The notes under the pieces were generated by a model. It was not told the origin of the DNA. It worked only from the letters and a program-made list of their open reading frames with translations, and made no database searches. Shown here piece after piece: positions 21,301-58,802 of a stretch of DNA of 64,000 nucleotides (position 1 is the stretch's first letter; each line of letters begins with the position of its first letter). Position numbers and translations under genes: made by a program. The stretch is taken from positions 62,001 through 126,000 of the IMG/VR virus record IMGVR_UViG_3300042302_000394. The stretch is one strand, 5' to 3'.

Positions 21301-21422
21301 AACAGGTTCTCATTTTATGTGCTACCACTACACCAACACCGCTGACCAAGCAGTGCCCAGGATTCGAACCTGGCCCGTCTTTTTTACAGAAAGTTTAATA
21401 AGATTGCTGAAAAGAACCTAAA
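21301..21422 (-). ncRNA. CAGCAA-motif RNA E1 with permuted tRNA module (anticodon GUA, T, acceptor hairpin, D)
   Basis: TTAGGTTCTTTTCAGCAA...AGAACCTGTT terminal stem; internal CCAGGTTCGAATCCTGG then TGGTGTAGTGGTAGCACA. Confidence 0.75.
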
Positions 21423-21553: not shown

Positions 21554-21673
21554 AACAGGATACCTTTTTCGATGGCTTGGAAGCCATTGCTCTACCATTG
21601 AGCGATCTACGCAAAAGCGTGGAGTTGGAATCGAACCAACATGTCATTTAAGACGTTGCTGCATGTATCCTAA
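21554..21673 (-). ncRNA. CAGCAA-motif RNA E2 with permuted tRNA module (T, acceptor hairpin, D, anticodon-like)
   Basis: TTAGGATACATGCAGCAA...GTATCCTGTT; GTTGGTTCGATTCCAAC then GCTCAATGGTAGAGC. Confidence 0.75.
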
Positions 21674-22501: not shown

Positions 22502-22566
22502 AACAGGTTAATACTAGTTTAATGACCTAGCAGTCGCCATATTTTTGATAGCTGTAATTAACCTAA
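22502..22566 (-). ncRNA. CAGCAA-motif RNA E3 (short form)
   Basis: TTAGGTTAATTACAGCTA...ATTAACCTGTT. Confidence 0.65.
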
Positions 22567-23837: not shown

Positions 23838-23929
23838 TGGTACCAGCGGAGGGGATCGAACCCTCTCAAGAACGCTAATCTGGCGCTAAAAGGTCTATAA
23901 GGCCTCTCTGACTACCAAGTCTCGCTGGC
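23838..23929 (-). tRNA. Atypical tRNA, TAT anticodon, long variable arm
   Basis: 7-bp acceptor, T arm, CCA; CTTATAG loop; 4-nt D loop. Confidence 0.6.
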
Positions 23930-24456: not shown

Positions 24457-25947
24457 TTATTTTAGAGACATGAGATCATTATAATACGTTTGTACAAACA
24501 AGTGAACTCTATTTTGCCATTCATTGTCTAAGTTGTATTCGCCCCATCGCAGTCTATCTATTTCTTCAACAGTGTATCCAAATTGTAGGACTTCAACTGC
24601 GTTCCAGCCGCCTCTTTTAACATGCGGGGCCGCGCTTTCAGTTAGCAAATTTGTCCATTTTACTACATCTAAAAATGTAAGACCTGATGAATGCTTCCAC
24701 CAAGTTTGTCTCCAGAGACGCTTACCAATAGCGTAAGACTCGGGCAATACCTGTATTATTTCAAATCCATATTTTTCTGCATTACGTTCAAACTCACTAG
24801 TGAATACCGAAGTATCAGGTTTATTAAGTAATAAGGGAATTATTTTCCAGGATGTTATTTTATTATCGACACACCAGTTATGAGTTTCTTTTAAATCATC
24901 TAATGTTTCTGGAGGAATGCCTGCGATAAAACTAAGATGTTCTTTTACTTTTCCCTGCCATCTGTCCTGTAACAAATGAGGCAAATAGTCTTTGGCTTTT
25001 TTTCCGCTAAATGCCTTTCCTACCAAAGCAGATGCATCTTTATTAAAACTTTCTATTCCAAAAAAAGCTCCATAAAGACCGCTTTCCAATAACATATCTT
25101 CAGTATGACGATGAGCCTCAATTAAATCTAATCTTAAATAAGTTGCATATTTAATTTTAAAAGGTAAGGATGATACCATTTTGGCAAATTCTTCCAATCT
25201 TTCGGTGTCTGCATTAAATGTATCGTCTAAAATATAATAATTCGTTGTTCCAAATCTTTCGTAATTGTCAAGTAACTCATCTCTTATATTTTCCATCGGT
25301 TTAAGGAAATCTTTTTTATTTTTTCCAATTAACGGATATTGACAGAATTTACACTTAAAAATGCATCCCCTGGTTGTTTCTAACGGCAATGCTTCATTTG
25401 GCTGTATAGCATCACTGTCATGCCACCTAAAATTACACTGCTCAATTGAAAATCCTTCATTACTTTGATACGAAGATTCTTTTACAATTTTGTAACCGTC
25501 TGCACCTATTTCGACAAATGGCTGTGGACCTTTTTTAAAAATCCAATTGCAAAATTGTAACATTGTATTTTCAGCATGACCTGTAAAATAATAATCAAGT
25601 GTTTTTTTTAATTTTCCTTTAATTATACCAACAGATGGGCCACCGGCTATTATTTTTAAATTTGGATGTTTTGTTTTAAGTTGTTTAATTGCTGAACTGA
25701 ATATAGAAAAGAATACATCGTTAGCTTCTAATAAAATTCCTCCAAGGCCTATAACTTTGGTTTCATCTGTTACAAATTTTTCAAACAGTGCATTTACTTT
25801 ATCCAATGTAAAAATTGGTTCAGAATAATTTATAACCTGTACTGTATAACCAAAGAGTCTTAAATACCAAGCTAATTGGTGACCCCCAATTGATCTAGGA
25901 GCGGCGCCCCGATAATCGCTAATTGTTTGTATAATAATAACATTCAT
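24457..25947 (-). CDS. Radical SAM protein with B12-binding-like N-terminus
   Basis: ETTRGCIFKCKFC, DDTFN, FGIES; paralog of 12239-13771. Confidence 0.85.
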   Translation of the reverse strand: MNVIIIQTISDYRGAAPRSIGGHQLAWYLRLFGYTVQVINYSEPIFTLDKVNALFEKFVTDETKVIGLGGILLEANDVFFSIFSSAIKQLKTKHPNLKIIAGGPSVGIIKGKLKKTLDYYFTGHAENTMLQFCNWIFKKGPQPFVEIGADGYKIVKESSYQSNEGFSIEQCNFRWHDSDAIQPNEALPLETTRGCIFKCKFCQYPLIGKNKKDFLKPMENIRDELLDNYERFGTTNYYILDDTFNADTERLEEFAKMVSSLPFKIKYATYLRLDLIEAHRHTEDMLLESGLYGAFFGIESFNKDASALVGKAFSGKKAKDYLPHLLQDRWQGKVKEHLSFIAGIPPETLDDLKETHNWCVDNKITSWKIIPLLLNKPDTSVFTSEFERNAEKYGFEIIQVLPESYAIGKRLWRQTWWKHSSGLTFLDVVKWTNLLTESAAPHVKRGGWNAVEVLQFGYTVEEIDRLRWGEYNLDNEWQNRVHLFVQTYYNDLMSLK

Positions 25948-25987
25948 AATAGTAAACAAATATTTATCATTAACTGTATATAAAACT

Positions 25988-27117: not shown

Positions 27118-27327
27118 TTTGTAAGCTGTTGCGTCCCTCATATCGCAACCATTTTCCCTTGTAATAAAGCCGGCAGGGTCAAGATACGTCACTTGGGCTT
27201 TGTCCAGACGATACTCCAACTGTATTCCGATCTTCCGATCGGACGGGGATCGAACCCGCTACCTTCTACTGTTTTGGTAGTTCGAACATACCTAGACAGC
27301 GTGACTCTACTTGCTGACACTTACAAA
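27118..27327 (-). ncRNA. Variant CAGCAA-motif RNA with permuted tRNA module
   Basis: TTTGTAAGTGTCAGCAA...CTTACAAA; CGGGTTCGATCCCCG, TCCGATC-GGAA-GATCGGA, ATAC-AGTTGGA-GTAT. Confidence 0.65.
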
Positions 27328-27330
27328 ACT

Positions 27331-27408
27331 TGGTGGACGATAGTGGAATCGAACCACTGTCACGGCAGGGTTGCTACCGCCTGTTATCCTTTACAACAGT
27401 CATCGCCC
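27331..27408 (-). tRNA. Atypical Ala-like tRNA
   Basis: G3:U70, A73, CCA, T arm; 8-nt anticodon loop. Confidence 0.55.
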
Positions 27409-27415
27409 ATTAACT

Positions 27416-27496: not shown

Positions 27497-27559
27497 AACA
27501 GGATAGCATTTTTGGTTTCATTAACAGTGAAATTTTTGATTTTGCTGTTGCTATCCTAA
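27497..27559 (-). ncRNA. CAGCAA-motif RNA E4 carrying an Asn(GUU) anticodon arm
   Basis: TTAGGATAGCAACAGCAA...TTTCA-CTGTTAA-TGAAA...TGCTATCCTGTT. Confidence 0.75.
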
Positions 27560-27621
27560 AAATTTGTGCTGGGTAGGTGCTCCAGCGCCGATCGTCTTGA
27601 TATTATCTCACGGCCCTTGTT

Positions 27622-27697
27622 TGGTGCCACAAACTGGACTCGAACCAGTAACACACGAATTTTCAATCCGCTGCTCTACCATTGGAGCTATTGTGGC
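27622..27697 (-). tRNA. tRNA-Phe(GAA)
   Basis: Cloverleaf with CCA. Confidence 0.9.
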
Positions 27698-27705
27698 AAA
27701 ATGTT

Positions 27706-27780
27706 TGGTGGAGGCCGGGGGTATCGAACCCCTCTAGTCACGATGCTTGCAAGGCAACGCCGCAGCCCTCTGCTGCCCCC
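27706..27780 (-). tRNA. tRNA-Ala(TGC), reduced D arm
   Basis: G3:U70, CTTGCAA loop, CCA. Confidence 0.65.
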
Positions 27781-27789
27781 AAATTGTAT

Positions 27790-27868
27790 TGGCTCCGTGT
27801 GTGAGGATCGAACTCACCTAATCATTGATTAACAGTCAAGTCCTTGCACCATGCTTGGATTTCACGGA
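27790..27868 (-). tRNA. tRNA-Asn(GTT)
   Basis: CTGTTAA loop, CCA. Confidence 0.8.
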
Positions 27869-27876
27869 ATAAATTT

Positions 27877-27951
27877 TGGCGATCCTGCGGGGAATCGAAC
27901 CCCGATATCCGACTAGACAGGCCGGTATAATAACCACTATATGACAGGACC
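27877..27951 (-). tRNA. tRNA-Asp(GTC)
   Basis: Cloverleaf with CCA. Confidence 0.88.
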
Positions 27952-27958
27952 ATTAACT

Positions 27959-28045
27959 TGGTGGAGACGACTGGAGTCGAACCAGTAGTGCCTTTCGGGC
28001 GGCGGATTTACAGTCCACTGGGGTTACCAATTTTCCTACATCTCC
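27959..28045 (-). tRNA. tRNA-Tyr(GTA)
   Basis: Long variable arm, CCA. Confidence 0.9.
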
Positions 28046-28051
28046 ATAACT

Positions 28052-28127
28052 TGGCGCCACAGACGGGAATCGAACCCGCCTAAATCGGATAGACAATCCG
28101 GTGCCCTACCCAGAGGACTACTGTGGC
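28052..28127 (-). tRNA. tRNA-Asp(GTC)
   Basis: Cloverleaf with CCA. Confidence 0.85.
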
Positions 28128-28132
28128 AAAAC

Positions 28133-28231
28133 TAATAACACAAGCATAACATTAACCAGTTATGCCTGCCACTCTCATCCCTCGCTGGCAGGGAGACTGA
28201 ATGCCATCCTACAGTGCGTTGAGTGTTGTTA
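28133..28231 (-). ncRNA. Putative structured RNA
   Basis: TAACAACAC...GTGTTATTA terminal pairing between tRNAs. Confidence 0.35.
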
Positions 28232-28234
28232 ACT

Positions 28235-28311
28235 TGGTACTCCGTACGGGACTCGAACCCGTTTTTCCAACTTGAAAGGCTAGCGTCCTAAACCACGTAG
28301 ACGAACGAAGT
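28235..28311 (-). tRNA. tRNA-Glu(TTC)
   Basis: Cloverleaf with CCA. Confidence 0.85.
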
Positions 28312-28315
28312 AAAA

Positions 28316-28428
28316 TTCTTATACAACTACACACTCACAGGACTCGAACCTGCCAACTGGACTTCTCGTCCAGCTAGATACCACCTCTATCTGCTTGGCC
28401 TAAGCATTTGTGTGTATGTGTATAAGAA
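28316..28428 (-). ncRNA. tRNA-like multi-hairpin RNA with extended terminal helix
   Basis: TTCTTATACA...TGTATAAGAA ends; GCAGGTTCGAGTCCTGT T arm; no CCA. Confidence 0.5.
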
Positions 28429-28445
28429 CTTCTTATACTGTAAAT

Positions 28446-28516
28446 TTTTAAAGAACATTTACATCTAATTGCTTAGTGTATGTGTTAATTATAGCAAGGT
28501 TTTACCTCCTTGTCAA
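28446..28516 (-). promoter_or_regulatory. sigma70 promoter followed by boxA-like element
   Basis: TTGACA(28516)-N17-TATAAT then TGTTCTTTAAAAA. Confidence 0.65.
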
Positions 28517-28559
28517 TAGTCTTTGCAACTATTTTTGTTGTATTTTAACAACACTATTA

Positions 28560-28625
28560 AACAGGATACTGTTTGCTTTTCACAGCCAAAAAGTGAAATA
28601 TTTTGGTTTGCTGTAAGTATCCTAA
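28560..28625 (-). ncRNA. CAGCAA-motif RNA E5
   Basis: TTAGGATACTTACAGCAA...TTTCAC-TTTTTGGCT-GTGAAA...AGTATCCTGTT. Confidence 0.7.
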
Positions 28626-28627
28626 AC

Positions 28628-28701
28628 TGGTGCGGGGTAAGGGAATCGAACCCTTAACTACTGGGTGGAAGCCAGTGATCTTACCATTAAACGAACCACG
28701 C
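28628..28701 (-). tRNA. tRNA-Gly(TCC)
   Basis: ACTGG-CTTCCAC-CCAGT arm, CCA. Confidence 0.82.
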
Positions 28702-28791
28702 ATAAACTTGGCCCTCGAGGTGTATGTCGCAGTACACATTACTAACTATTGGCAAGGGTGTATACGGCCCCGCTTAACTCAAGGATAAAAT

Positions 28792-28867
28792 TGGTGCAAC
28801 CTGTAGGGATCGAACCTACTTCAATGGCTCTTCAGACCACCGCTATGACCACATCAGCTAAAGTTGC
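28792..28867 (-). tRNA. tRNA-Phe(GAA)
   Basis: Cloverleaf with CCA. Confidence 0.85.
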
Positions 28868-28874
28868 ATTGTAT

Positions 28875-28950
28875 TGGTGCCCCAGTCCGGAATCGAACCG
28901 ACTTCCCCTGCTTACAAGACAGGACCTCATCCATTAAAGGCTTCAAGGGC
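28875..28950 (-). tRNA. tRNA-Thr(TGT)
   Basis: Cloverleaf with CCA. Confidence 0.82.
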
Positions 28951-28957
28951 AATAAAC

Positions 28958-29034
28958 TGGAACATCGGGTGGGACTCGAACCCACGACTGGACGGATTTG
29001 CAATCCGCTACATTGGCCGCTCTGTCACCGATGC
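28958..29034 (-). tRNA. tRNA-Cys(GCA)
   Basis: U73, CCA. Confidence 0.88.
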
Positions 29035-29040
29035 ATAAAC

Positions 29041-29119
29041 TGGTCTGTGTGGCAGGATTCGAACCTGCGACCTCCGACTTCCAAGGCCGGCCGTCTGACC
29101 TGACTGACATTACACACAG
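29041..29119 (-). tRNA. tRNA-Pro(TGG)
   Basis: Cloverleaf with CCA. Confidence 0.85.
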
Positions 29120-29126
29120 ATAAAAT

Positions 29127-29201
29127 TGGTAGCCACGGACAATTTCGAAATGTCGACTCCCGCCTTATCAAGACGGTACTCTGCCTCTGAGTTACGTGGC
29201 C
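29127..29201 (-). tRNA. tRNA-Ile(GAT)
   Basis: TTGATAA loop, CCA. Confidence 0.85.
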
Positions 29202-29206
29202 ATAAA

Positions 29207-29608
29207 TTACCACTCTGCGTATTCTGTTATTATACGAGAGTTTTTATCTTTTCTTTTTGTTGATTCTACACATCGCAGTTTAACTTCTTTTACATCGCAT
29301 ATTTCTGCAATAGGAACGAGATATACTTTATCTAATTCATTTACATAGACTGCAATATAATCGATGTTACTTTCATTGTAAGAAACTCTATTTGTAAATG
29401 TGTTTTGAGATAGTTTAATTGTAACTATTCCGTTACTTTCTAACGATCTAAACTTAACTTGAATTCGTAAAAGTTTACCGTCGTGTCTATCTAACACATA
29501 ATCATAAGGACAACCTTGTGGCATTTTGCCAGTCCAATATCCTCTTTTGGCAGAAACGAGCACAAATGCTGCTTCTCCTATTTCACCTTTTTCGTTTGAT
29601 ATACTCAT
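29207..29608 (-). CDS. PD-(D/E)XK homing-type endonuclease
   Basis: KGEIGE...PYDYVLD...RIQVK...IDYIAVY. Confidence 0.8.
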   Translation of the reverse strand: MSISNEKGEIGEAAFVLVSAKRGYWTGKMPQGCPYDYVLDRHDGKLLRIQVKFRSLESNGIVTIKLSQNTFTNRVSYNESNIDYIAVYVNELDKVYLVPIAEICDVKEVKLRCVESTKRKDKNSRIITEYAEW

Positions 29609-29646
29609 AGTGTTCTCCTACAAGTATTTATAACGCTCGCCAGGAA

Positions 29647-29678
29647 AGCGATTGTTATACCATTTAACTACAAGAGGA
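29647..29678 (-). pseudogene. 5' half of a tRNA gene
   Basis: CCTCTTGTAGTTAAATGGTATAACAATCGCTT = acceptor 5' strand plus D arm; no 3' half found. Confidence 0.5.
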
Positions 29679-29690
29679 ATAAACTGCTTA

Positions 29691-29763
29691 GGGGTGACTA
29701 ACGGGATTTGAACCCGTACTGACAAGGTCACAACATGTAGTGCTACCATTACACTATAGCCAC
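29691..29763 (-). tRNA. tRNA-His(GTG), no encoded CCA
   Basis: TTGTGAC loop, C73; acceptor extended by CTTAGG/CCTAAG. Confidence 0.8.
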
Positions 29764-29786
29764 ACCTAAGAAGTCTAACAAAATAT

Positions 29787-29860
29787 TGGCACCCGGACTA
29801 GGGATCGAACCTAGGCTAACAGAGTCAAAGTCTGTTGTGCTACCATTACACAATCCGGGA
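29787..29860 (-). tRNA. tRNA-Gln(TTG)
   Basis: Cloverleaf with CCA. Confidence 0.88.
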
Positions 29861-29866
29861 ACAAAA

Positions 29867-29926
29867 AACAGGATGCTTATTTTTCAATTAAAAGTTGAAT
29901 TTTTTGATTTGCTGGACGCATCCTAA
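29867..29926 (-). ncRNA. CAGCAA-motif RNA E6 carrying a Lys(UUU) anticodon arm
   Basis: TTAGGATGCGTCCAGCAA...TTCAA-CTTTTAA-TTGAA...GCATCCTGTT. Confidence 0.75.
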
Positions 29927-29929
29927 AAC

Positions 29930-30004
29930 TGGCATACCCCCTTGGATTTGAACCAAGCCTAACGGTTTTGGAGACCGGCGTGCTGCCGCTGACACTAGGG
30001 ATAC
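29930..30004 (-). tRNA. tRNA-Trp(CCA)
   Basis: CTCCAAA loop, CCA. Confidence 0.88.
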
Positions 30005-30011
30005 ATAATAA

Positions 30012-30076
30012 AACAGGATCAACTTTGGTTTTTTTGAATAATAAAAAAGTTTTTAAGTTTGCTGAACTGATCCTAA
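30012..30076 (-). ncRNA. CAGCAA-motif RNA E7
   Basis: TTAGGATCAGTTCAGCAA...TTGATCCTGTT. Confidence 0.7.
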
Positions 30077-30079
30077 AAC

Positions 30080-30195
30080 TGGTACGACCGGTAGGTCTCG
30101 AACCTACAAGAGCACGGTAACTATGTTATGTGCCCCTTCCCCTGACCTATGCTATGAGCATAACGGGAGGTCTGCCATATTCCACTTACGGTCGC
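30080..30195 (-). tRNA. Oversized (116 nt) tRNA-like RNA with expanded anticodon arm
   Basis: GCGACCG/CGGTCGT acceptor, T arm, CCA; extra TATGC-TCATA-GCATA hairpin; long variable arm. Confidence 0.55.
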
Positions 30196-30203
30196 ATAAT
30201 GTA

Positions 30204-30238: not shown

Positions 30239-30330
30239 TGGCGGAAAGCAGAGGAGTCGAACCCCATCCCATTTCTGAGAACCCAGTTTTCAAGGCTGGT
30301 CGCAGGACCAACCCCGCTGCATTACTTTCC
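30239..30330 (-). tRNA. tRNA-Ser(TGA)
   Basis: Long variable arm, CCA. Confidence 0.88.
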
Positions 30331-52137: not shown

Positions 52138-53535
52138 TTACGCTATTACAGCGTAACGTGGAGCGTTGATTGTAGCCAACATTACATTGACTGGATCCAA
52201 CGATTCGGCGCTTAGGATGCTCTTCATGATAGCAGGGCTGAATCCGCTAACAAGGGCAACACCCTTCTTGTCATGCTTAACTGGAACGTTGCCAGCACGA
52301 GCATTCAAGTTCCAGAATACAATGTTGGGAACAGTGTATCCTGCCGCTTCATACTTACGAGCGATCATTTCCATTGCCGAGTCGTCGTGACGAGCACAGT
52401 AATTGAATTCCATATCACTCATGATAAGGATATACTTTGGCATATCCTTTGCATCAACATTGCCCTTGACTGCGAAGTCAAGCACAGTGTTAAATGCGGC
52501 GTGTAGATTAGTACTCATGTCCCATTCTGCACGTTGTAGTTGAGCCAACTTGCTCAACAGGTTACCCTTCAAGATTTCGATCTTGCTCTTGGTAGAGAAG
52601 GTCAAAAACATGTCCTTGAATGGACCAGTGTTCTTGTCAGCAAGGTACAAGCCCAAACTAACGCAAACATCCATACAGGTCAAGTTAGCGTTTCCGCCAA
52701 CTGGAGAGCTCATAGAGCCAGACACGTCACACATTGGCAACACCAGTTCATCACCGATGTAGTTTGGCAATGCATCCCATTGTGCTTGCACAACAGTGGC
52801 GTCACCACCAAACTTGTGGCTCTTGATAACGTCATATGGGTAAACAGCCGAAGCGTTAACCTTTGCGTCACCAGTAACCAACTTTGCCTTGTAAGCATCA
52901 TAGCCTACAGGGTCGTGCTTCTTAAAAGCCTTTTGGTATCGAGCAGCCGCCAACGATGGTACGTGGCTATAGTTGATGTCATCCCAAGTGTTTGCACACA
53001 TGTTCTGTTCAACTGTCTTGCTCAAGTTAACCAAACTCTTACGGTAGAACTTTGGGCTCATTCCGAAGAAGGTGCGGATTTCAGCAGCCAACGCACCTTG
53101 ACGTGGCATCCACTTTGCGGCCAGCCCGTTGCTTGCACGTAGCGCATCACCGATTAGGGTAAATGCTTGTGCCTTCACTTCCTTAGAAGTAAAGATCAAC
53201 AGGTCGTCCCAACGACCGAATTCAGCCAGGTGTGGCAAAATACGGGCAAGCGCCTTAGGGTTGGTCTTTTCAAGATTCAAAAGAATCTTACGAACAACTT
53301 CACGTTCGCCTGCACCACCACGGACGTCACGAGCCCACATCAAAAGACGTAGAGCAAGAGTTTCGTCTTGTGCTAGTGCGCGAGCAAACTGAGTGCTCAA
53401 ATCCTTACCACGGCTTGCACCAATGGCAAAGAACAAATCTACAAGATCACTCTTGCTAGATTCAAAAGTCTTCATACCGTTTGCGGTACGAGATTCAACT
53501 GGAACGGACTTAACCGCTTCTACAAATGCGTTCAT
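52138..53535 (-). CDS. DUF2828-type TROVE-like/vWA protein (Ro60-related)
   Basis: RDVRGGAGER, GRWDD, AKWMPR, DVSGSM MIDAS, SDMEF, FWNL, VSGFSP. Confidence 0.8.
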   Translation of the reverse strand: MNAFVEAVKSVPVESRTANGMKTFESSKSDLVDLFFAIGASRGKDLSTQFARALAQDETLALRLLMWARDVRGGAGEREVVRKILLNLEKTNPKALARILPHLAEFGRWDDLLIFTSKEVKAQAFTLIGDALRASNGLAAKWMPRQGALAAEIRTFFGMSPKFYRKSLVNLSKTVEQNMCANTWDDINYSHVPSLAAARYQKAFKKHDPVGYDAYKAKLVTGDAKVNASAVYPYDVIKSHKFGGDATVVQAQWDALPNYIGDELVLPMCDVSGSMSSPVGGNANLTCMDVCVSLGLYLADKNTGPFKDMFLTFSTKSKIEILKGNLLSKLAQLQRAEWDMSTNLHAAFNTVLDFAVKGNVDAKDMPKYILIMSDMEFNYCARHDDSAMEMIARKYEAAGYTVPNIVFWNLNARAGNVPVKHDKKGVALVSGFSPAIMKSILSAESLDPVNVMLATINAPRYAVIA

Positions 53536-53547
53536 TTTATTTTCCTT

Positions 53548-53590
53548 CAGGTTACTTTTAAATTAAAAAATTTTGCTGTATATAACCTAT
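53548..53590 (-). promoter_or_regulatory. CAGCAA-motif copy A abutting RBS of DUF2828 gene
   Basis: ATAGGTTATATACAGCAA...TAACCTG-AAGGA-AAATAAA-ATG. Confidence 0.65.
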
Positions 53591-53593
53591 ACA

Positions 53594-53835
53594 AGCAGGA
53601 TGGGTGTGCCAATTTGTTTATTTTCTGGTCTGGCCAATTATAGCACCCAGACCCTATCGACAATTCATGTTGACTATCTAAACTTGTGTCTGCGTTAGAA
53701 ACATACAAAGTCTTTCCCTTGTGTCATCCATTCCTTGAGTGTCTAGTTTCCTAGAACAGTATCTCCACTGTGTCCTACAACCACTTTCTATGGCATTTAA
53801 CTTTAGTATTGTTTTAATTGCTGAATCCATCCTAG
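53594..53835 (-). ncRNA. CAGCAA-motif RNA B (long form)
   Basis: CTAGGATGGATTCAGCAA...CCATCCTGCT; TTGAAC-N17-TATAAT immediately upstream. Confidence 0.65.
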
Positions 53836-53893: not shown

Positions 53894-54061
53894 AACAGGT
53901 TAGTTGTCGGCTGCTTTTATTCAACTCAGGCCACCACTCTGAGCTCGCTAGTCTATTTCAATGTTGACTCTTCAACGCACTCGGTCAAGACTCTGTGCTC
54001 CAATTCAACACCATAGGGTCTAGCAGTCCATATTAAATGAAAATTGCTGCACCTAACCTAA
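53894..54061 (-). ncRNA. CAGCAA-motif RNA C (long form)
   Basis: TTAGGTTAGGTGCAGCAA...CTAACCTGTT; shares internal GACTGCTAG with E3. Confidence 0.65.
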
Positions 54062-54162: not shown

Positions 54163-55269
54163 TTAAAATGCATCCATGTAGTTGTAGTACTTTTCTTTAA
54201 TGCGGTTCAGTGTCACACGGTCACCGTCCTCGTTAATGAAAACAAACTTACCAGCAGTTGCATCAATCTGCTTGAGATCTTCTTGACCAAATCGAGCATC
54301 TTCCCAATTCCAGTCTGTTTCAATAGAAGCCAGACCGTCGAGTGCTGGCTCAGCACTCTTTGCATCTTCAAAGACCTTGTAGTCAATGCTGACACGATTG
54401 GTCAGTGGATTGCCTGTCCAGACTTCTTGCTCAATCAACTCCGGATTAATGTCTAGGCCTTTGATCTGCAGGGCAACCTTGTACTTGCTGTCACCACCGA
54501 ACTCTGGCTTGGCGTTGAGCATACGCATAGCTTCGCTGGCAGTTTCTTTGTATCGATTCATTTCTTCAACCAATGCCTTCAGCATGTCAAAGTTGAACTG
54601 ATCAAACATTGCCGCAACTCGGCATACACTGGCGATATGATCAACATTGTCCAGATTGTCTGCACAGTACTCCATAATGAAGTCTTGTTCCAGACCTTTG
54701 AAGTCCAGTGAGTAGAAGATACGACCAGGACGGTTTCGCATGTGGCTGTCAATGCGCCACTTGTCGTTACAGGTTAGAATGAACAGCTTCTTGGAGGGAT
54801 ATACACCGTCCAATAGTGTCAGCATCTTTTCCTGGTCATCCTTGTCGTAGACCTTTTCAAACTCGTCAAATAGGATCACTGTGGGTTGCTCAATCATCTG
54901 CATGAAGCTGTTAAAGCCTTCACCGCACCATGGCTCGTTGATAACAATTGTTGGCACCGCCGCTTCTGCGGCAGTGACTGCCAACAGTTTGGCTAACAGT
55001 GTCTTGCCCGAACCTTTTTCACCAGTAAGCATTACACCAGTGGATGCAGTACGGTCATTGAAAGTATTGAGAATACGTTGGCTCTGCTTGCGAGTATCTC
55101 CGTATACCTTGCCGCGGATCTCGAAGCTTTCGATCGCTTCAAGATAGAAACAGCCAGCCATCTTGTCAAATTTAACAGTGTAGTTGCCAACAGGCAGTTG
55201 CTCATGTAGATCCATTGCTTCCTTAGTGGAAACATTAAATCGTGTACCAGATTTCAAAAAATATGTCAT
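54163..55269 (-). CDS. AAA+ ATPase
   Basis: GEKGSGKT, ILFDEFEK, NRPGR. Confidence 0.85.
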   Translation of the reverse strand: MTYFLKSGTRFNVSTKEAMDLHEQLPVGNYTVKFDKMAGCFYLEAIESFEIRGKVYGDTRKQSQRILNTFNDRTASTGVMLTGEKGSGKTLLAKLLAVTAAEAAVPTIVINEPWCGEGFNSFMQMIEQPTVILFDEFEKVYDKDDQEKMLTLLDGVYPSKKLFILTCNDKWRIDSHMRNRPGRIFYSLDFKGLEQDFIMEYCADNLDNVDHIASVCRVAAMFDQFNFDMLKALVEEMNRYKETASEAMRMLNAKPEFGGDSKYKVALQIKGLDINPELIEQEVWTGNPLTNRVSIDYKVFEDAKSAEPALDGLASIETDWNWEDARFGQEDLKQIDATAGKFVFINEDGDRVTLNRIKEKYYNYMDAF

Positions 55270-55346: not shown

Positions 55347-56741
55347 TTATTTGCGAGCGTTAGCTCGAACTTCTTCGAACGAAATCTCGTTGTAAAGTTT
55401 GCCGTTCTCGAATACCTTCTGTAGAGAAGACTTCCACTCGAGTCCTCGATCAGTCCAACCTTTTGGTTGTTCTACGGAGGATTGATATTCTCCGCCGGAC
55501 TCCCACAGTTCGACTCGGCCTTTCTTGCTTTTCTTACCTGGATCAGTGACAGGATCTTTCTGGACATCTACCCAGGTTCCGTTGATACAGGCTGCACTTG
55601 CTTTTAGGGCAAACTTCTGCGTGTCACGATCTACAATCTGCAACAGGGCACCGCCCATACCAAAAGCAATGTTATCGGCACTCCAACCCATGGCCATGAA
55701 CGCACCAAGGATACTGCGAACAGTGAGTTCGTTGATGCCGTCACCTTGGATCAGACGCACATTGTTCAGTACCTTGAATCCTTTAGCGTTAACTGTGTAG
55801 CCAAACTTCTCGCCCAGGATTTCAACTAGACGACGGTTGACTTCGACAGGATCGCCACTATCAGGCCTAATGACAACAGTAGCACCACTATCGATAACCT
55901 GTTGGCGAAGTTCTTCGCCCCAGAGCTTAGAGGCTGCGTTGTAGATATCATAACTATCACTGACAACAGCGAGGATAGTACCGGGACGAGCGAACTGGGT
56001 AAGCATATTTCTGTAAGCATCTACTTCCCCGTCACGACCCCAACTGGTGATTGTACTATGCTCTGCGGCTGGGATTGAGAAACCAGCAATACCAGCATTG
56101 TAATATTCACGAGCAAACAGAACACCAGTAATAGTGTCAGTTCCCATAAAGTTGACCAAGTGCGCGGCACTGCCAATGCCAGCACTTTCAAGGCTAGATA
56201 CGCCACGAGCACCAAAGTCGTGCAACTTAAAATCGATAGTAGTAGGATCACCAGTTCTCTCCAAGAAGTCAAGAATGACTTGTTTAATTGTGTATGATTG
56301 TGTTGCCACAGTAGTACCATACCACACTGCACGAAGCAGGGCAGTTTCCAACCAAGTGGTCAACCAGAAGCATTCTGGATCTGTGTTTTCAATTGTCGCA
56401 AGTACATTTTTGACGGGGACCACAGTTCCTTCTGGCACGGCCCGAATGACAACTGGGAGGTATCCACGGTGCTTGTCCAGTATGTATTGCCATCCTGCTC
56501 GGTTGAAAGGCTCACCGTGTAGGGTAAGGATTTCTTCAGCGATGTCAATGTCTGCTTGGGTGATGGGTTCGAGAAGGTACTCTTTGATAAAAGCCTGTAA
56601 TCCGAAGAATACTGTTCTATCGTACCGCCCGCCTCTAGACTCGATATATGAATATACACCTGTAGTACCTGCTGGGTATTGTTTGAACATGCTGACTTTG
56701 TAGCTGTCAGTGTTCAAAATAAGATTTTTTGCGAGTTTCAT
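55347..56741 (-). CDS. nadV: Nicotinamide phosphoribosyltransferase
   Basis: TDSYK, LHDFGARG, PAAEHS, VSDSYD, RPDSGDP, IQGDG. Confidence 0.92.
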   Translation of the reverse strand: MKLAKNLILNTDSYKVSMFKQYPAGTTGVYSYIESRGGRYDRTVFFGLQAFIKEYLLEPITQADIDIAEEILTLHGEPFNRAGWQYILDKHRGYLPVVIRAVPEGTVVPVKNVLATIENTDPECFWLTTWLETALLRAVWYGTTVATQSYTIKQVILDFLERTGDPTTIDFKLHDFGARGVSSLESAGIGSAAHLVNFMGTDTITGVLFAREYYNAGIAGFSIPAAEHSTITSWGRDGEVDAYRNMLTQFARPGTILAVVSDSYDIYNAASKLWGEELRQQVIDSGATVVIRPDSGDPVEVNRRLVEILGEKFGYTVNAKGFKVLNNVRLIQGDGINELTVRSILGAFMAMGWSADNIAFGMGGALLQIVDRDTQKFALKASAACINGTWVDVQKDPVTDPGKKSKKGRVELWESGGEYQSSVEQPKGWTDRGLEWKSSLQKVFENGKLYNEISFEEVRANARK

Positions 56742-57782: not shown

Positions 57783-58802
57783 TTATGCTCCTACAAAATG
57801 TGAGATGATTTCAAAATGGTCTTCAAAGCATTCTTCGCTTCGAACCTCTGCAATAGGTACCCAACGTGCTTTCTCAGCATCGTCACTGCCTTTTACTTTT
57901 GGCAACTCACCGTCTGGCAGTTGGATGTGAAACGCATGTGTAATTATACGTCCTCTAGGACTTCTGTCAACCGCATCAAATACCTTACTGCGAACAATCG
58001 ATCCACGCAACACCGGAGCAGGCACTTTAATCATAGTTTCTTCACGCAGTTCACGGATAGCCGCATCTTCAACTGACTTGTCGGTATTGGCGTTGACGTA
58101 GCCGCCTGGCAGTGCCCACAAGCCCTTGCCGGGCTCTGCACGGCGTTTGATCATCAGCACATGACCTGAACAGATCACAACACTATCAGCAGTGCTGAAG
58201 ATTGGAGGATATGGCAATGACGCATACTGTTTCTTATAGTTTGCAACAAACTCTCGCTCACGGATAATTTGTTCATATTCGGCATGGTGGCGGAATTCAT
58301 CCAAGAACTCAAACACAGTTTCTGGCACAACACCTTTAATGAACTTCATGTTGACATCACGCTTGAAGTAAAGATCACGAATGTCAACAGCACTAAGGAA
58401 CTCAATCAGTTCCACGTTTTCATATCCCCATTGTGGGAACATGTCCAGATAGAAGCTACTGTCGTCTTTCTTGTGTCCAATAATACCAGTCTTGGTACCA
58501 AGGACTGCATACTTGCTGACAATGCCTTGGATACGCACTGCCCAGGCTTGATCGTTATAGATAGTGTCTACATTGGGTTCAATGTAGATTTGCATATTCA
58601 ATCCACGGGTAGCCGATTTGATCATGCCCGCACGTTCTGCACTTGTGAACGGATTCTTGTAAGTACGGGGTTGTGCGGCAGAACCAGTGATAATTACTAA
58701 CTGTTCGCATAGGGCAGTGGCACGTTTTACAATCTCAAGGTGAGCACTGTGAAATGGTTGAAAGCGCCCAATGAGCACTAGGGTGTGATATTTTTTAGTC
58801 AT
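57783..58802 (-). CDS. nadM: Bifunctional NMN adenylyltransferase/Nudix hydrolase
   Basis: GRFQPFHSAH, NPFT; ALPGG...AIRELREET, GSDDA. Confidence 0.92.
   Translation of the reverse strand: MTKKYHTLVLIGRFQPFHSAHLEIVKRATALCEQLVIITGSAAQPRTYKNPFTSAERAGMIKSATRGLNMQIYIEPNVDTIYNDQAWAVRIQGIVSKYAVLGTKTGIIGHKKDDSSFYLDMFPQWGYENVELIEFLSAVDIRDLYFKRDVNMKFIKGVVPETVFEFLDEFRHHAEYEQIIREREFVANYKKQYASLPYPPIFSTADSVVICSGHVLMIKRRAEPGKGLWALPGGYVNANTDKSVEDAAIRELREETMIKVPAPVLRGSIVRSKVFDAVDRSPRGRIITHAFHIQLPDGELPKVKGSDDAEKARWVPIAEVRSEECFEDHFEIISHFVGA

What the first reader, a model, noticed from the sequence alone, without database searches (positions are those of the whole stretch)
27497..30076. Minimal motif RNAs display isolated anticodon stem-loops (Lys UUU, Asn GUU): possible anticodon-nuclease decoys
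E6 contains TTCAA-CTTTTAA-TTGAA and E4 contains TTTCA-CTGTTAA-TGAAA. Both are perfect 5-bp stems with 7-nt loops identical to the Lys(UUU) and Asn(GUU) loops of tRNAs in this same array. E5 has a Gln(UUG)-like loop with a mismatch closure, and the E7 loop is non-canonical. Established: tRNA-Lys anticodon loops are targets of defence nucleases such as PrrC. Inference: these ~60 nt RNAs could titrate or trap anticodon nucleases or modification enzymes.
Basis: partly seen in the sequence, partly recalled or inferred. Interest (0 to 1): 0.72.

Follow-up and report, generated by a model that had tools for sequence, protein, structure and literature searches.

The report
Phage Y-like RNAs mimicking anticodon arms
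Four ~60-nt RNAs tucked between the tRNA genes of a lake-water phage belong to a large, undescribed family of small RNAs that pair a conserved handle (probably gripped by the phage's Ro60-like protein) with a hairpin that copies a tRNA anticodon arm, most likely as bait for proteins such as host anticodon nucleases.

Summary
E4-E7 (window 27499-30073, minus strand) share a handle: AG-G(G)(A/U)U stem, unpaired (U)(A/U)CAGCAA, a variable insert, then a closing strand ending CCUG-UU. Ten copies lie in this 208-kb phage, three just upstream of a DUF2828/DUF7788 gene whose model folds like Ro60/TROVE. I collected 761 copies (588 unique) from 285 phage sources. Of 329 unique minimal copies, 212 carry a 5-bp/7-nt hairpin (8.8% in shuffles) and 123 a YU-NNN-RA loop (0.3% in shuffles). 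The displayed triplets are mainly UUU, UGU, UCU and GUU. Stems covary while the frame A31-C32-U33...A37-A38-U39 stays fixed. Larger copies hold whole permuted tRNA bodies; one hits Rfam YrlA below threshold. The minimal copies sit in tRNA slots, always on the tRNA strand. The family also occurs in cultured Escherichia, Ralstonia and Listeria phages. In coliphage Bas63, a preprint reports a Ro60-like protein as a counter-defence gene. So E4-E7 are Y-RNA-like partners of a phage Ro60 paralogue that display tRNA mimics. The decoy function is plausible, since PARIS AriB targets Lys-UUU, Thr-UGU and Asn-GUU, but it is untested. The handle also matches Dictyostelium Class I RNAs below Rfam threshold.

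The parts
27499..27556 (-). E4: minimal element. Handle GGAUAGC.../...GCUAUCC-UG with CAGCAA; displays UUUCA-CUGUUAA-UGAAA (Asn GUU-like arm).
   Evidence: 62.2 bits to model R1 (it is in the model's seed)
28562..28622 (-). E5: minimal element, 6 nt after tRNA-Gly-CCA. Hairpin UUUCAC-UUUUUGGCU-GUGAAA, a non-canonical loop class (UUUGG).
   Evidence: 50.6 bits, E 2.6e-12 to R1; Rfam RF01414 29.4 bits
29869..29923 (-). E6: minimal element between tRNA-Trp and tRNA-Gln. Displays UUCAA-CUUUUAA-UUGAA (Lys UUU-like arm).
   Evidence: RF01414 29.4 bits; 64.5 bits to R1 (in seed)
30014..30073 (-). E7: minimal element upstream of tRNA-Trp, with a weak U6/A6 hairpin and a non-canonical loop.
   Evidence: 40.5 bits, E 2.8e-9 to R1; RF01414 24.3 bits
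22504..22563 (-). Minimal element, CAGCUA variant, after tRNA-Thr. Hairpin CUAG-GUCAUUAAA-CUAG (9-nt loop class).
   Evidence: 23.6 bits to R1
21556..21670 (-). 115-nt element. The same handle encloses a T arm, a capped acceptor hairpin, a D arm and an arm AUGGC-UUCCAAG-GCCAU (Trp CCA-like).
   Evidence: full-length sub-threshold hit to Rfam YrlA RF02553, 29.3 bits, E 0.005
21303..21418 (-). 116-nt element. The handle encloses a circularly permuted tRNA: CUUU-CUGUAAA-AAAG (Tyr GUA-like), variable loop, T arm, capped 7-bp acceptor, D arm.
53896..54058 (-). E1: 163-nt element with the same handle and a large structured insert, upstream of the Ro60-like gene.
   Evidence: conserved in related loci
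53596..53832 (-). E2: 237-nt element with the same handle.
53548..53587 (-). E3: 40-nt element ending 12 nt before the start codon of the Ro60-like gene, in its 5' leader.
   Evidence: 30.1 bits to R1
52138..53535 (-). Gene for a 465-aa DUF2828 + DUF7788 protein with an intact DxSGS MIDAS motif, predicted Ro60/TROVE-like ring plus vWA. It is the proposed protein partner.
   Evidence: Pfam; model pLDDT 76.6; Foldseek full-length top hits are Ro60/TROVE, E 1e-8, TM about 0.5-0.55

Best explanation
E4-E7 are members of a large family of small phage RNAs built like Y RNAs. Their 5' and 3' ends pair into a 6-9-bp stem (AG-GGAU.../...AUCC-UG-UU). This is followed on the 5' side by an unpaired, nearly invariant (U)(A/U)CAGCAA. 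This 'handle' is most likely the binding site of the phage's Ro60-like protein (Pfam DUF2828/DUF7788). The insert is a display module. In E4 and E6, and in roughly 40-60% of minimal members, it is a 5-bp/7-nt hairpin that copies a tRNA anticodon arm (A31-C32-U33-NNN-A37-A38-U39). The copied arms are mostly Lys-UUU, Thr-UGU, Arg-UCU and Asn-GUU. In larger members the insert is a whole permuted or acceptor-less tRNA body. The minimal RNAs are transcribed within the tRNA array and are probably released by tRNA end-processing: RNase P at the next tRNA, and trimming after the preceding encoded CCA. Shown here: the family, its structure, its tRNA mimicry, and its genomic coupling to tRNA arrays and to the Ro60-like gene. 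Inferred: protein binding to the handle. Inferred, and my favoured function (about 0.35-0.4 on its own): the RNP presents anticodon-arm baits to host proteins that recognise those arms, above all defence anticodon nucleases. It would act as a competitor or trap while the phage's own full-length tRNAs keep translation going.
For: Family and structure: 10 copies in the phage, all on the minus strand within the window. There are 761 copies (588 unique) in 285 sources. Both stems covary: covariation score 0.53 against 0.13 in shuffles and 0.10 or less when slid. Model R1 finds E5, E7, E3 and nothing spurious in 64 kb. Mimicry: 212 of 329 unique minimal copies have a 5-bp/7-nt hairpin (8.8% in shuffles), and 123 have a YU-NNN-RA loop (0.32% in shuffles). 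In the first tally U33 was present in 99 of 105 loops, A37 in 91 and A38 in 93, and A34 in only 2, although A makes up 47% of the inserts in the later composition count. Of 140 mid-size copies, 86 have a T arm, and the anticodon-like arm lies 5' of it in 43 of 44. One copy matches YrlA over its full length below threshold. Array context: 162 of 274 minimal copies lie within 10 nt of a tRNA gene, all on the same strand, at fixed spacings of 6 nt and 8-9 nt. Protein link: 186 of 190 elements are co-oriented with the DUF2828 gene, in 76 of 80 loci. Of 204 loci found by RNA pattern alone, 89 contain the gene; all 170 minimal elements there share its strand, at a median distance of 938 nt. The protein model matches Ro60/TROVE over its full length. 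Function: the displayed set differs sharply from the phages' real tRNA gene spectrum. Its leaders Lys-UUU, Thr-UGU and Asn-GUU are exactly the AriB (PARIS) targets, which share U36-A-A-U39 (PMC12409363). The mimics keep U39 in 116 of 123 cases, whereas real phage tRNA-Lys genes often have C39. A preprint reports that deleting the Ro60-like gp130 of the Felixounavirus Bas63 sensitises it to the Ppl defence (PMC11482910). The same RNA family is present in a Felixounavirus tRNA array. NARP2-type anti-defence genes are neighbours.
Against: There is no binding, cleavage or genetic data for any of these RNAs. The one phenotype for a homologous protein is against Ppl, which is not known to target tRNA. 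The Felixounavirus copies do not show canonical anticodon loops. About 40% of minimal copies, including E5 and E7, carry other hairpins, so an anticodon arm is not obligatory. AriB needs D-loop contacts as well as the anticodon arm, so a bare arm may bind such enzymes poorly. The anticodon set could partly reflect A/U-rich composition and descent from a few founders, because the types are one-mutation neighbours on shared stems. Expression evidence is weak: metatranscriptome contigs cover the elements at low depth while the neighbouring ORF reads zero, but the contigs carry no strand direction and DNA carry-over is not excluded. No RNA ligase, RtcB or CCA-adding enzyme was found in the 58%-complete record, which bears on the repair rival rather than on this reading.
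Confidence: 0.55

Rival explanations
1. Same RNP, different job. As proposed for bacterial Rsr-YrlA, the RNAs gate or tether the Ro60-like ring for RNA quality control or repair of damaged tRNAs. The tRNA-like or anticodon-arm module recruits tRNA-handling enzymes (ligases, modification enzymes, exonucleases) or simply protects the RNA from nucleases. No decoying is involved.
For: Ro60-like fold. YrlA-like member. YrlA is a substrate of tRNA enzymes, and rsr-yrlA sits in an RNA-repair operon induced by damaged tRNAs (PMC4201824 read; PMC7790460 from its abstract as listed). In Listeria phage LP-064 the Ro-like gene and three elements lie about 1.3 kb from an RtcB-like ligase and an RNA ligase. 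The jumbo-phage survey places ROT/TROVE proteins among RNA-repair genes (PMC7824862).
Against: This phage record shows no RtcB, Rnl2-type ligase or CCA-adding enzyme, although it is only 58% complete. The rival does not explain why the displayed anticodons are so skewed to Lys, Thr, Arg and Asn, or why many copies with different triplets are kept.
Confidence: 0.25
2. The hairpins are sponges or ligands for other anticodon-arm readers: t6A37 or i6A37 enzymes, TGT, class IIb aminoacyl-tRNA synthetases, or the ribosomal decoding site. Through these they tune host translation or tRNA modification.
For: Almost all displayed loops are NNU-AA or NNA-AA. By established knowledge these are the substrates of t6A and MiaA enzymes respectively. 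Loops with U33-G34-U35 fit TGT minimal substrates. 17-nt anticodon arms are known to bind 30S subunits.
Against: Nothing in the genomic context points to these enzymes. The bias toward U/A at position 36 is also what A/U-rich composition would give.
Confidence: 0.1
3. They are decayed tRNA genes, or spacers and processing signals of the tRNA array, with no function of their own. The anticodon-arm likeness would be a relic.
For: They occupy tRNA slots at tRNA-like spacing. Some annotators call the corresponding regions of Felixounaviruses 'tRNA-pseudo' or 'tRNA-OTHER'.
Against: The handle is conserved and both stems covary across phages whose Ro-like proteins are only 30-60% identical, from Proteobacteria to Firmicutes hosts. 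The handle also occurs outside arrays, directly upstream of the Ro-like gene. Relics would not keep a fixed loop frame on changing stems.
Confidence: 0.03
4. They are armless mini-tRNAs that are charged and used in translation.
For: A 6-9-bp terminal stem plus an anticodon arm recalls the armless mitochondrial tRNAs of nematodes (from knowledge). In some mid-size members the handle replaces the acceptor stem of an otherwise ordinary D-anticodon-T arrangement.
Against: There is no encoded CCA, while every real tRNA in the array encodes it. The 3' tail is a conserved UG-UU. The stem sequence is the same whatever the triplet, so it carries no identity elements. ARAGORN and the Rfam tRNA model do not call them. 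No CCA-adding enzyme was found.
Confidence: 0.02

Closest known systems
Bacterial and phage Y RNAs of the YrlA type (Rfam RF02553) with Ro60/Rsr
   Same: A small RNA encoded beside a Ro60-fold protein. Its 5' and 3' ends form the stem, with a conserved single-stranded-side motif. The insert mimics tRNA (T arm, capped acceptor, D arm). One window copy aligns to the whole YrlA model.
   Different: The protein is a DUF2828/DUF7788 paralogue, not a Pfam TROVE protein (only 12 bits to TROVE chains by sequence). The handle motif is CAGCAA, not GNCGAAN0-1G. Scores fall far below the YrlA gathering score (29.3 against 69). There are many copies per genome, placed inside tRNA arrays. The minimal members keep only the anticodon arm, the very arm that YrlA lacks.
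Dictyostelium Class I RNAs (Rfam RF01414; PMC7919456)
   Same: Length 42-65 nt. A 6-bp terminal stem begins with G. An unpaired motif ending (U)UACAGCAA follows the 5' strand at nearly the same offset. The insert is variable and A/U-rich. The conserved ends are AAG... and ...CUGU in Dictyostelium against UAG... and ...CUGUU here. RF01414 is the only non-tRNA Rfam family hit repeatedly and at full length: 24-29 bits in the window and in three other phage contigs.
   Different: All hits fall below the gathering score (41.5). The offset differs by one base. D. discoideum inserts show no anticodon-like hairpins. Class I RNAs are eukaryotic genes with a DUSE promoter, and their known binder is the RRM protein Rnp1A. 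Whether dictyostelids carry a DUF2828 protein was not tested here.
Phage T5 tRNA-Lys(UUU), Thr(UGU) and Asn(GUU) variants that neutralise PARIS (PMC11464382, PMC12409363)
   Same: RNA-level counter-measures encoded in a phage tRNA cluster and centred on the same three anticodons.
   Different: The T5 molecules are full, functional tRNAs that escape cleavage and replace the host tRNAs. The RNAs here cannot be charged and would have to act by binding, not by replacement.
Bas63 gp130, a Ro60-like counter-defence protein (preprint PMC11482910)
   Same: A Felixounavirus protein lying directly upstream of the tRNA genes. The Felixounavirus DUF2828 protein is about 43% identical to the window's. Four family RNAs lie in that array in phage bumzen, and the region is conserved in at least 251 records. 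The authors guessed that some 'tRNAs' might be Y RNAs.
   Different: The RNAs were not identified in that work. The phenotype is against Ppl, whose target is unknown. Orthology of gp130 with the bumzen protein is inferred from genus and gene position, not aligned here.

Membership tests
Y RNA / YrlA (RF02553) | Encoded next to a Ro60 (TROVE) gene | tested here: inconclusive
   The neighbour is a DUF2828/DUF7788 protein whose model matches Ro60/TROVE structures over its full length. It is not a TROVE family member by sequence. Adjacency and co-orientation are strong.
Y RNA / YrlA (RF02553) | Ro60-binding motif GNCGAAN0-1G (GGUCCGA in vertebrates) in the terminal stem | tested here: not met
   The conserved motif is (U)(A/U)CAGCAA after a GG(A/U)U stem.
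Y RNA / YrlA (RF02553) | tRNA-like domain with T arm, capped acceptor stem and D arm; score at or above the Rfam gathering score | tested here: not met
   E4-E7 have no T or D arm. The 115-nt copy at 21556-21670 has them but scores 29.3 bits against a gathering score of 69.
Y RNA / YrlA (RF02553) | Physically bound by the Ro60 protein | not testable with these tools
   Complex prediction does not fold protein-RNA jobs.
Dictyostelium Class I RNA (RF01414) | [quoted passage not shown] | tested here: met
   Lengths are 55-61 nt, stems 6-9 bp, and G1 is invariant.
Dictyostelium Class I RNA (RF01414) | 11-nt motif CCUUACAGCAA next to the 5' stem strand (U3, C6, C9, A10, A11 nearly invariant) | tested here: inconclusive
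   CAGCAA is invariant here by construction of the search. The preceding two bases are mostly U and A/U. E5 has CUUACAGCAA. The offset is one base shorter.
Dictyostelium Class I RNA (RF01414) | Conserved ends AAG... and ...CUGU | tested here: met
   The ends are (U)AG-G... and ...C-CUG-UU; the two bases after CUG are U in 87-89% of copies.
Dictyostelium Class I RNA (RF01414) | Rfam gathering score of 41.5 bits | tested here: not met
   Scores are 24.3-29.4 bits in the window and 25.0-28.8 bits in other phage contigs.
Dictyostelium Class I RNA (RF01414) | DUSE promoter about 60 nt upstream; dictyostelid genome | tested here: not met
   These are phage elements inside polycistronic tRNA arrays, 6 nt after a tRNA.
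tRNA | Cloverleaf recognised by ARAGORN or Rfam RF00005, and an acceptor end with CCA | tested here: not met
   Not called by either tool. No CCA is present, while all real tRNAs of the array encode it.
Anticodon stem-loop mimic (functional class, not a curated family) | 5-bp stem and 7-nt loop with pyrimidine-32, U33, purine-37 and A38, kept under stem covariation | tested here: met
   Met for E4 and E6 and for 123 of 329 unique homologues. Not met for E5 and E7.

The most novel reading that the evidence does not exclude
A phage ribonucleoprotein, made of a Ro60-like DUF2828 ring plus a set of interchangeable CAGCAA-handle RNAs, works as a programmable bait. Each RNA shows the anticodon arm, or the whole body, of a tRNA that host immune nucleases attack, and the particle captures or blocks those nucleases. 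The same handle in Dictyostelium Class I RNAs would then mean that eukaryotic DUF2828 proteins are the long-missing partners of that RNA class, giving one RNP type shared by phages and amoebae.
Probability: 0.3. Interest if true: 0.9.

Novelty: new variant of a known kind. Interest (0 to 1): 0.8.

Why it matters
Phage tRNA arrays are now read as counter-measures to tRNA-cutting immunity. This family shows that many arrays also carry non-tRNA passengers that have gone unannotated or been labelled pseudo-tRNAs. It supplies a concrete RNA ligand, with a defined motif, for the very large DUF2828/DUF7788 protein family. That family has 7,862 50%-identity clusters and occurs in 710 cultured phage records. 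One Ro60-like Felixounavirus protein, inferred to belong to it, has a reported counter-defence phenotype without a known mechanism. The family extends tRNA mimicry by Y RNAs down to a bare anticodon arm, which makes the question of what the tRNA-like part of a Y RNA is for directly testable in E. coli phages. It also offers the first lead outside Dictyostelia for the origin and partner of Class I RNAs, which were described as unique to social amoebae.

Tried and rejected
1. Rfam at gathering thresholds finds only tRNAs in the window, so the family is not a curated one.
2. A broad Rfam E-value scan of 11 loci was swamped by tRNA rows and showed nothing useful.
3. Complex prediction with the Ro-like protein and the E6 RNA was not folded. 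It gives no evidence for or against binding.
4. The AAA ATPase ORF at 54163-55269 looked like a MoxR-type partner of the vWA domain. It is a neighbour in only 13 of 164 loci, so I dropped it.
5. RtcB, Rnl2-type RNA ligase and CCA-adding enzyme were not found in the phage record, which is 58% complete.
6. DNA similarity to cultured phages finds only tRNA pieces.
7. Metatranscriptome contigs give only weak, direction-less evidence of transcription.
8. Mycobacteriophage Lolly9 and Vibrio phage ValKK3 loci gave no clear elements with my pattern. The motif may differ there.
9. I could not obtain Avesson et al. 2011 to see the other three Class I RNA-binding proteins. I could not test whether dictyostelids encode DUF2828, because organism names are hidden in the AlphaFold cluster hits.
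10. Literature searches for DUF2828 and for anticodon-nuclease decoys found no description of these RNAs.

Full report
THE OBSERVATION

The window is bases 62001-126000 of a 207,813-b IMG/VR virus record, estimated 58% complete. Near-identical DNA is found in many lake-water metagenomes. ARAGORN finds 39 tRNA genes, all on the minus strand, between 21070 and 30415. At gathering thresholds Rfam reports nothing but tRNAs.

The framing pattern occurs 4 times against 0.05 expected by chance.

- E6 contains UUCAA-CUUUUAA-UUGAA and E4 contains UUUCA-CUGUUAA-UGAAA. Their loops are identical to those of the phage's own tRNA-Lys(UUU) and tRNA-Asn(GUU).
- E5 has a 6-bp stem and a 9-nt loop.
- E7 has a weak U/A hairpin.

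ANATOMY AND COPIES

All copies share one plan, read 5' to 3':

- a U-rich lead-in, then A, then G1;
- a 6-9-bp stem strand, mostly GGAU or GGUU followed by variable bases;
- two or three unpaired bases, mostly U then A/U;
- the invariant CAGCAA;
- an A/U-rich insert;
- the complementary strand ending in C;
- UG, then UU.

A pattern scan of the whole phage record finds ten convincing copies, all on the minus strand and all inside the window. They are:

- E4-E7;
- a CAGCUA variant at 22504-22563;
- two ~115-nt copies at 21303-21418 and 21556-21670;
- three copies (163, 237 and 40 nt) at 53896-54058, 53596-53832 and 53548-53587.

The last three lie directly upstream of, and co-oriented with, a 465-aa ORF at 52138-53535. 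That ORF carries Pfam DUF7788 (E 1.5e-51) and DUF2828 (E 7e-30).

THE PROTEIN

An AlphaFold model of this protein (pLDDT 76.6) has Ro60/TROVE proteins as its best full-length matches in the PDB and in Swiss-Prot models. These include a TROVE domain crystal structure, Thermus phage phiLo Ro60, Xenopus Ro60 with RNA, and Deinococcus Rsr. E-values are about 1e-8 and TM-scores about 0.5-0.55. By sequence alone it only grazes TROVE chains, at the MIDAS motif.

The family is very large. It has 7,862 50%-identity cluster representatives at E of 1e-3 or better, and it is mostly viral. It also has eukaryotic members. A tblastn search finds it in 710 cultured phage records. These include Felixounavirus, Listeria P100-like, Staphylococcus, Campylobacter, Enterococcus, Vibrio and Ralstonia phages and mycobacteriophages. 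In some of these records it is already annotated 'Ro-like RNA binding protein'.

RELATIVES OF THE RNA

In 80 IMG/VR loci taken around homologues of the protein, my scan finds 190 elements. Of these, 186 are on the gene's strand, and 76 of the 80 loci have at least one.

Two scans of IMG/VR used a pattern that fixes only the handle. They gave at least 120 and then 96 further stretches. In all, 285 sources (2.4 Mb) contain 761 elements, 588 of them unique. The size classes are about 50-69 nt (329 unique 'minimal'), 85-135 nt (140 unique), about 160 nt, and about 230-250 nt.

Of the 204 loci found by RNA pattern alone (mean length 9.2 kb), 89 also contain the Ro-like gene. All 170 minimal elements in those loci are on its strand, at a median distance of 938 nt.

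A covariance model was built from 80 distinct minimal elements. Run with filters off, it gives these results:

| Source | Hits (bits) |
|---|---|
| Window E5 | 50.6 |
| Window E7 | 40.5 |
| Window E3 | 30.1 |
| Window CAGCUA variant | 23.6 |
| Ralstonia phage RSP15 | 44.5, 41.6, 40.0 |
| Listeria phage LP-064 | 35.7, 28.2 |
| Escherichia phage bumzen | 33.6, 29.8, 20.9 |

Nothing else in the 64-kb window is recovered beyond parts of the larger copies.

ARE THE HAIRPINS ANTICODON-ARM MIMICS?

The sampling did not constrain the insert.

- Of 329 unique minimal elements, 212 contain a hairpin with a 5-bp stem and a 7-nt loop, against 8.8% of shuffled inserts.
- Of the same 329, 123 have a loop of the form pyrimidine-U-NNN-purine-A, against 0.32% of shuffled inserts.
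- Given a 5/7 hairpin, 58% fit this form, against 3.3% expected from base composition.
- Another fifteen or so differ only by having A at position 32.

The displayed triplets are listed below.

| Triplet | Count |
|---|---|
| UUU | 37 |
| UGU | 36 |
| UCU | 12 |
| GUU | 7 |
| UGA | 6 |
| GUA | 6 |
| GGA | 6 |
| GCA | 4 |
| GCU | 4 |
| singles | a few |

In a MAFFT alignment of 80 distinct elements, every pair of the hairpin stem and five of the six pairs of the terminal stem show changes on both sides. The covariation score is 0.53, against 0.13 in shuffles and 0.10 or less when partners are slid. One caveat applies: the rows were chosen for having both stems, so the percentage paired is circular, but the variety of pair types is not.

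The frame stays fixed while the stems change. In the first tally (105 loops), C32 was present in 82 loops, U33 in 99, A37 in 91 and A38 in 93. The closing pair A31-U39 was A-U in 77 of the 80 aligned elements. A34 is almost absent (2 of 105), although A makes up 47% of the inserts in the later composition count. The same stem backgrounds carry different triplets.

The mid-size class clinches the reading. Of its 140 unique members, 86 have a T-arm hairpin. Where an anticodon-like hairpin is also present, it lies 5' of the T arm in 43 of 44 cases.

- The window copy at 21303-21418 reads, in order: handle, CUUU-CUGUAAA-AAAG, a 5-nt variable loop, T arm, a 7-bp acceptor capped by a loop, D arm, handle. 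This is a complete, circularly permuted tRNA with no free ends.
- The copy at 21556-21670 aligns end to end with Rfam YrlA, at 29.3 bits and E 0.005, below the gathering score.

So the hairpin that follows CAGCAA in E4 and E6 stands where the anticodon arm stands in the larger relatives.

About 40% of minimal copies carry other conserved hairpins:

- a UUUGG loop class, to which E5 belongs;
- 9-nt loops of the type AAGCAUAUC in the copies that sit in the leader of the Ro-like gene;
- assorted others, E7 among them.

CONTEXT AND BIOGENESIS

Of 274 minimal elements in loci that also hold tRNA genes, 162 lie within 10 nt of one, and every one is on the same strand. The gap from the tRNA 3' end to G1 is mostly 6 nt. 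The gap from CUG to the next tRNA is mostly 8-9 nt. Every real tRNA checked in the window encodes CCA, and none of the elements does.

From this I infer that the elements are transcribed with the array. RNase P cleavage at the following tRNA, and processing behind the preceding one, would then set them free.

Contigs from four freshwater metatranscriptome libraries cover the E4, E5, E6 and E7 bins at low depth. The protein-coding ORF at 29240-29627 reads zero in all four. One 276-nt contig joins tRNA-Gly and E5. These contigs have no strand direction, many come from relatives, and DNA carry-over cannot be excluded.

WHAT IT MOST LIKELY DOES

Shown:

- a Y-RNA-like architecture: ends paired, and a conserved motif beside the 5' strand;
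- a Ro60-fold protein as the faithful genomic companion;
- inserts that mimic tRNA in whole or in part.

Inferred: the handle is the protein's binding site, and the insert is what the particle shows to other proteins.

The displayed set is not a sample of the phages' tRNA genes. Among 2,206 real tRNA genes in these loci, Met, Pro and Ala lead, and Lys-UUU accounts for 54. Instead, the mimics concentrate on Lys-UUU, Thr-UGU, Arg-UCU and Asn-GUU.

[quoted passage not shown] These share U36-A-A-U39 next to the cut, and a U39 change abolishes cleavage. Phage T5 escapes by supplying variant copies of exactly these three tRNAs (PMC12409363).

The mimics keep U39 in 116 of 123 cases, and 16 of them read UAAUCA like the E. 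coli site. Real tRNA-Lys genes of these phages, by contrast, often have C39 and GC-rich stems. From established knowledge, PrrC also targets tRNA-Lys, colicin D-type enzymes target tRNA-Arg, and colicin E5-type enzymes target Tyr, His, Asn and Asp.

A preprint reports that the Ro60-like gp130 of coliphage Bas63 lies directly upstream of the tRNA genes. It is needed to overcome the Ppl defence system, and the authors guessed that some 'tRNAs' there might be Y RNAs (PMC11482910). I find four CAGCAA elements in the corresponding array of the Felixounavirus bumzen. That region is conserved in at least 251 records.

In the window, the Ro-like locus neighbours Nampt and Nmnat-Nudix genes. This is the NARP2 counter-defence pair.

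Together this makes a role in the conflict over tRNAs the best reading, with the particle acting as bait or competitor for anticodon-arm-binding nucleases. I put about 0.85 on the identity (Y-like RNA with a tRNA or anticodon-arm mimic, partner of the Ro-like protein). I put about 0.35-0.4 on the decoy mechanism itself.

WHAT SPEAKS AGAINST THE DECOY READING

- Nothing has been measured.
- Ppl is not known to cut tRNA, and the Felixounavirus copies lack canonical loops.
- Many family members show other hairpins.
- AriB also reads the D loop, so a bare arm may be a poor ligand.
- The anticodon types are one-mutation neighbours in an A/U-rich frame, so descent and composition explain part of the skew.

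The main rival keeps the same RNP but assigns it to RNA surveillance or repair, as discussed for Rsr-YrlA. The RtcB and RNA-ligase genes next to the Listeria phage locus favour it. The absence of such genes in this incomplete record does not. The readings as mini-tRNA, as tRNA relic and as chance are each contradicted by tested features.

COMPARISON WITH KNOWN FAMILIES

The RNAs work like YrlA-type Y RNAs but fail that family's defining motif and score. The protein is a Ro60-fold paralogue, not a TROVE member by sequence.

Unexpectedly, the only non-tRNA Rfam family hit repeatedly and at full length is the Class I RNA of Dictyostelium (RF01414). It scores 29.4, 29.4 and 24.3 bits for E6, E5 and E7 (E 7e-4 for E6 in a 221-nt search), and 25-29 bits in three other phage contigs. 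All are below the gathering score of 41.5.

The published features of Class I RNAs (PMC7919456) all have counterparts here:

- length 42-65 nt;
- a 6-bp terminal stem starting with G;
- the unpaired motif CCUUACAGCAA next to the 5' strand;
- conserved ends AAG and CUGU;
- a variable insert.

The authors found no Class I RNA outside Dictyostelia, and its function and main partner are unsettled. Pfam describes DUF2828 as a family of eukaryotes and viruses (from my knowledge; the eukaryotic hits are consistent with this). I could not test whether dictyostelids have such a protein, so this remains a lead.

NOVELTY AND VERDICT

No paper in the searchable library describes these RNAs, and they are not in Rfam 15.

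The finding is a new variant of a known kind: the Ro60/Y-RNA particle with tRNA mimicry. It differs from that kind in four ways:

- a new handle motif;
- a new protein subfamily;
- placement in many copies inside tRNA arrays;
- reduction of the mimic to a bare anticodon arm.

The decoy idea is reasonable and now testable in E. coli phages, but it is unproven.

Noticed in passing
window 27499-30073 (E5, E6, E7); also L113, L128, L131: The handle of these phage RNAs matches the Dictyostelium Class I RNA model (RF01414) at full length, 24-29 bits, below the gathering score of 41.5. Shared features are the G-started 6-bp stem, (U)UACAGCAA, and the CUG(U) end. Class I RNAs were reported as unique to Dictyostelia. 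DUF2828 proteins also exist in eukaryotes, so they may be the common partner.
   Followed up: partly
window 53548-53587 (-): A 40-nt copy of the handle, with a short A/U insert, ends 12 nt before the start codon of the Ro60-like gene, just ahead of its AAGGAAA ribosome-binding site. Equivalent copies with a conserved 9-nt loop (AAGCAUAUC or ACCAUAAUC) hold this position in many relatives. This suggests autoregulation of the protein through its own leader.
   Followed up: partly
window 21303-21418 and 21556-21670 (-): Two ~115-nt RNAs are complete tRNA bodies without free ends: circularly permuted, with the acceptor capped by a loop, and enclosed in the CAGCAA handle. One displays a Tyr-GUA-like arm and the other a Trp-CCA-like arm. 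A homologue in L035 displays GCA in place of GUA on the same scaffold.
   Followed up: partly
window 55347-56741 (-) and 57783-58802 (-): Nampt (NAPRTase + NAMPT_N) and a cytidylyltransferase-like/Nudix protein lie next to the Ro-like locus. This is the gene pair of the NARP2 NAD+ reconstitution counter-defence pathway, so the region may be an anti-defence island.
   Followed up: partly
window 30078-30200, 30243-30330, 23842-23929, 27193-27415 (-): Several tRNA-like stretches in the array are missed by ARAGORN. One has acceptor and T arms but a ~45-nt insertion. Two give sub-threshold tRNA-Sec-type hits (33.9 and 26.7 bits). They may be intron-containing or long-arm tRNAs, or further mimics.
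   Followed up: no
window 29207-29608 (-) and 24457-25959 (-): Two protein genes interrupt the tRNA array: a PD-(D/E)XK endonuclease (PF11645) and a B12-binding radical SAM protein. The endonuclease ORF had zero depth in four metatranscriptome libraries, while the flanking tRNA regions were covered.
   Followed up: no
L289 (Listeria phage LP-064) 4666-4927 and 7855-11509: In this cultured Listeria phage, three handle RNAs lie directly upstream of the Ro-like gene. An RtcB-like ligase, a 'tRNA amidotransferase' and an RNA ligase follow within about 5 kb, giving an RNA-repair neighbourhood.
   Followed up: no
alignment A3 columns 25-26 with 50-51 (for example L226:5210-5270): A subset of minimal elements has an extra 2-3-bp helix (UAC/GUA or GC/GC, with A-U to G-C covariation) stacked outside the anticodon-like stem. 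One 5' base and ACC or AAC on the 3' side separate it from that stem, reminiscent of the position-26 and variable-loop junction of tRNA.
   Followed up: partly
window 54163-55269 (-): An AAA ATPase ORF sits just upstream of the three large handle RNAs. It looked like a MoxR-type partner for the vWA domain, but it neighbours the Ro-like gene in only 13 of 164 loci.
   Followed up: yes
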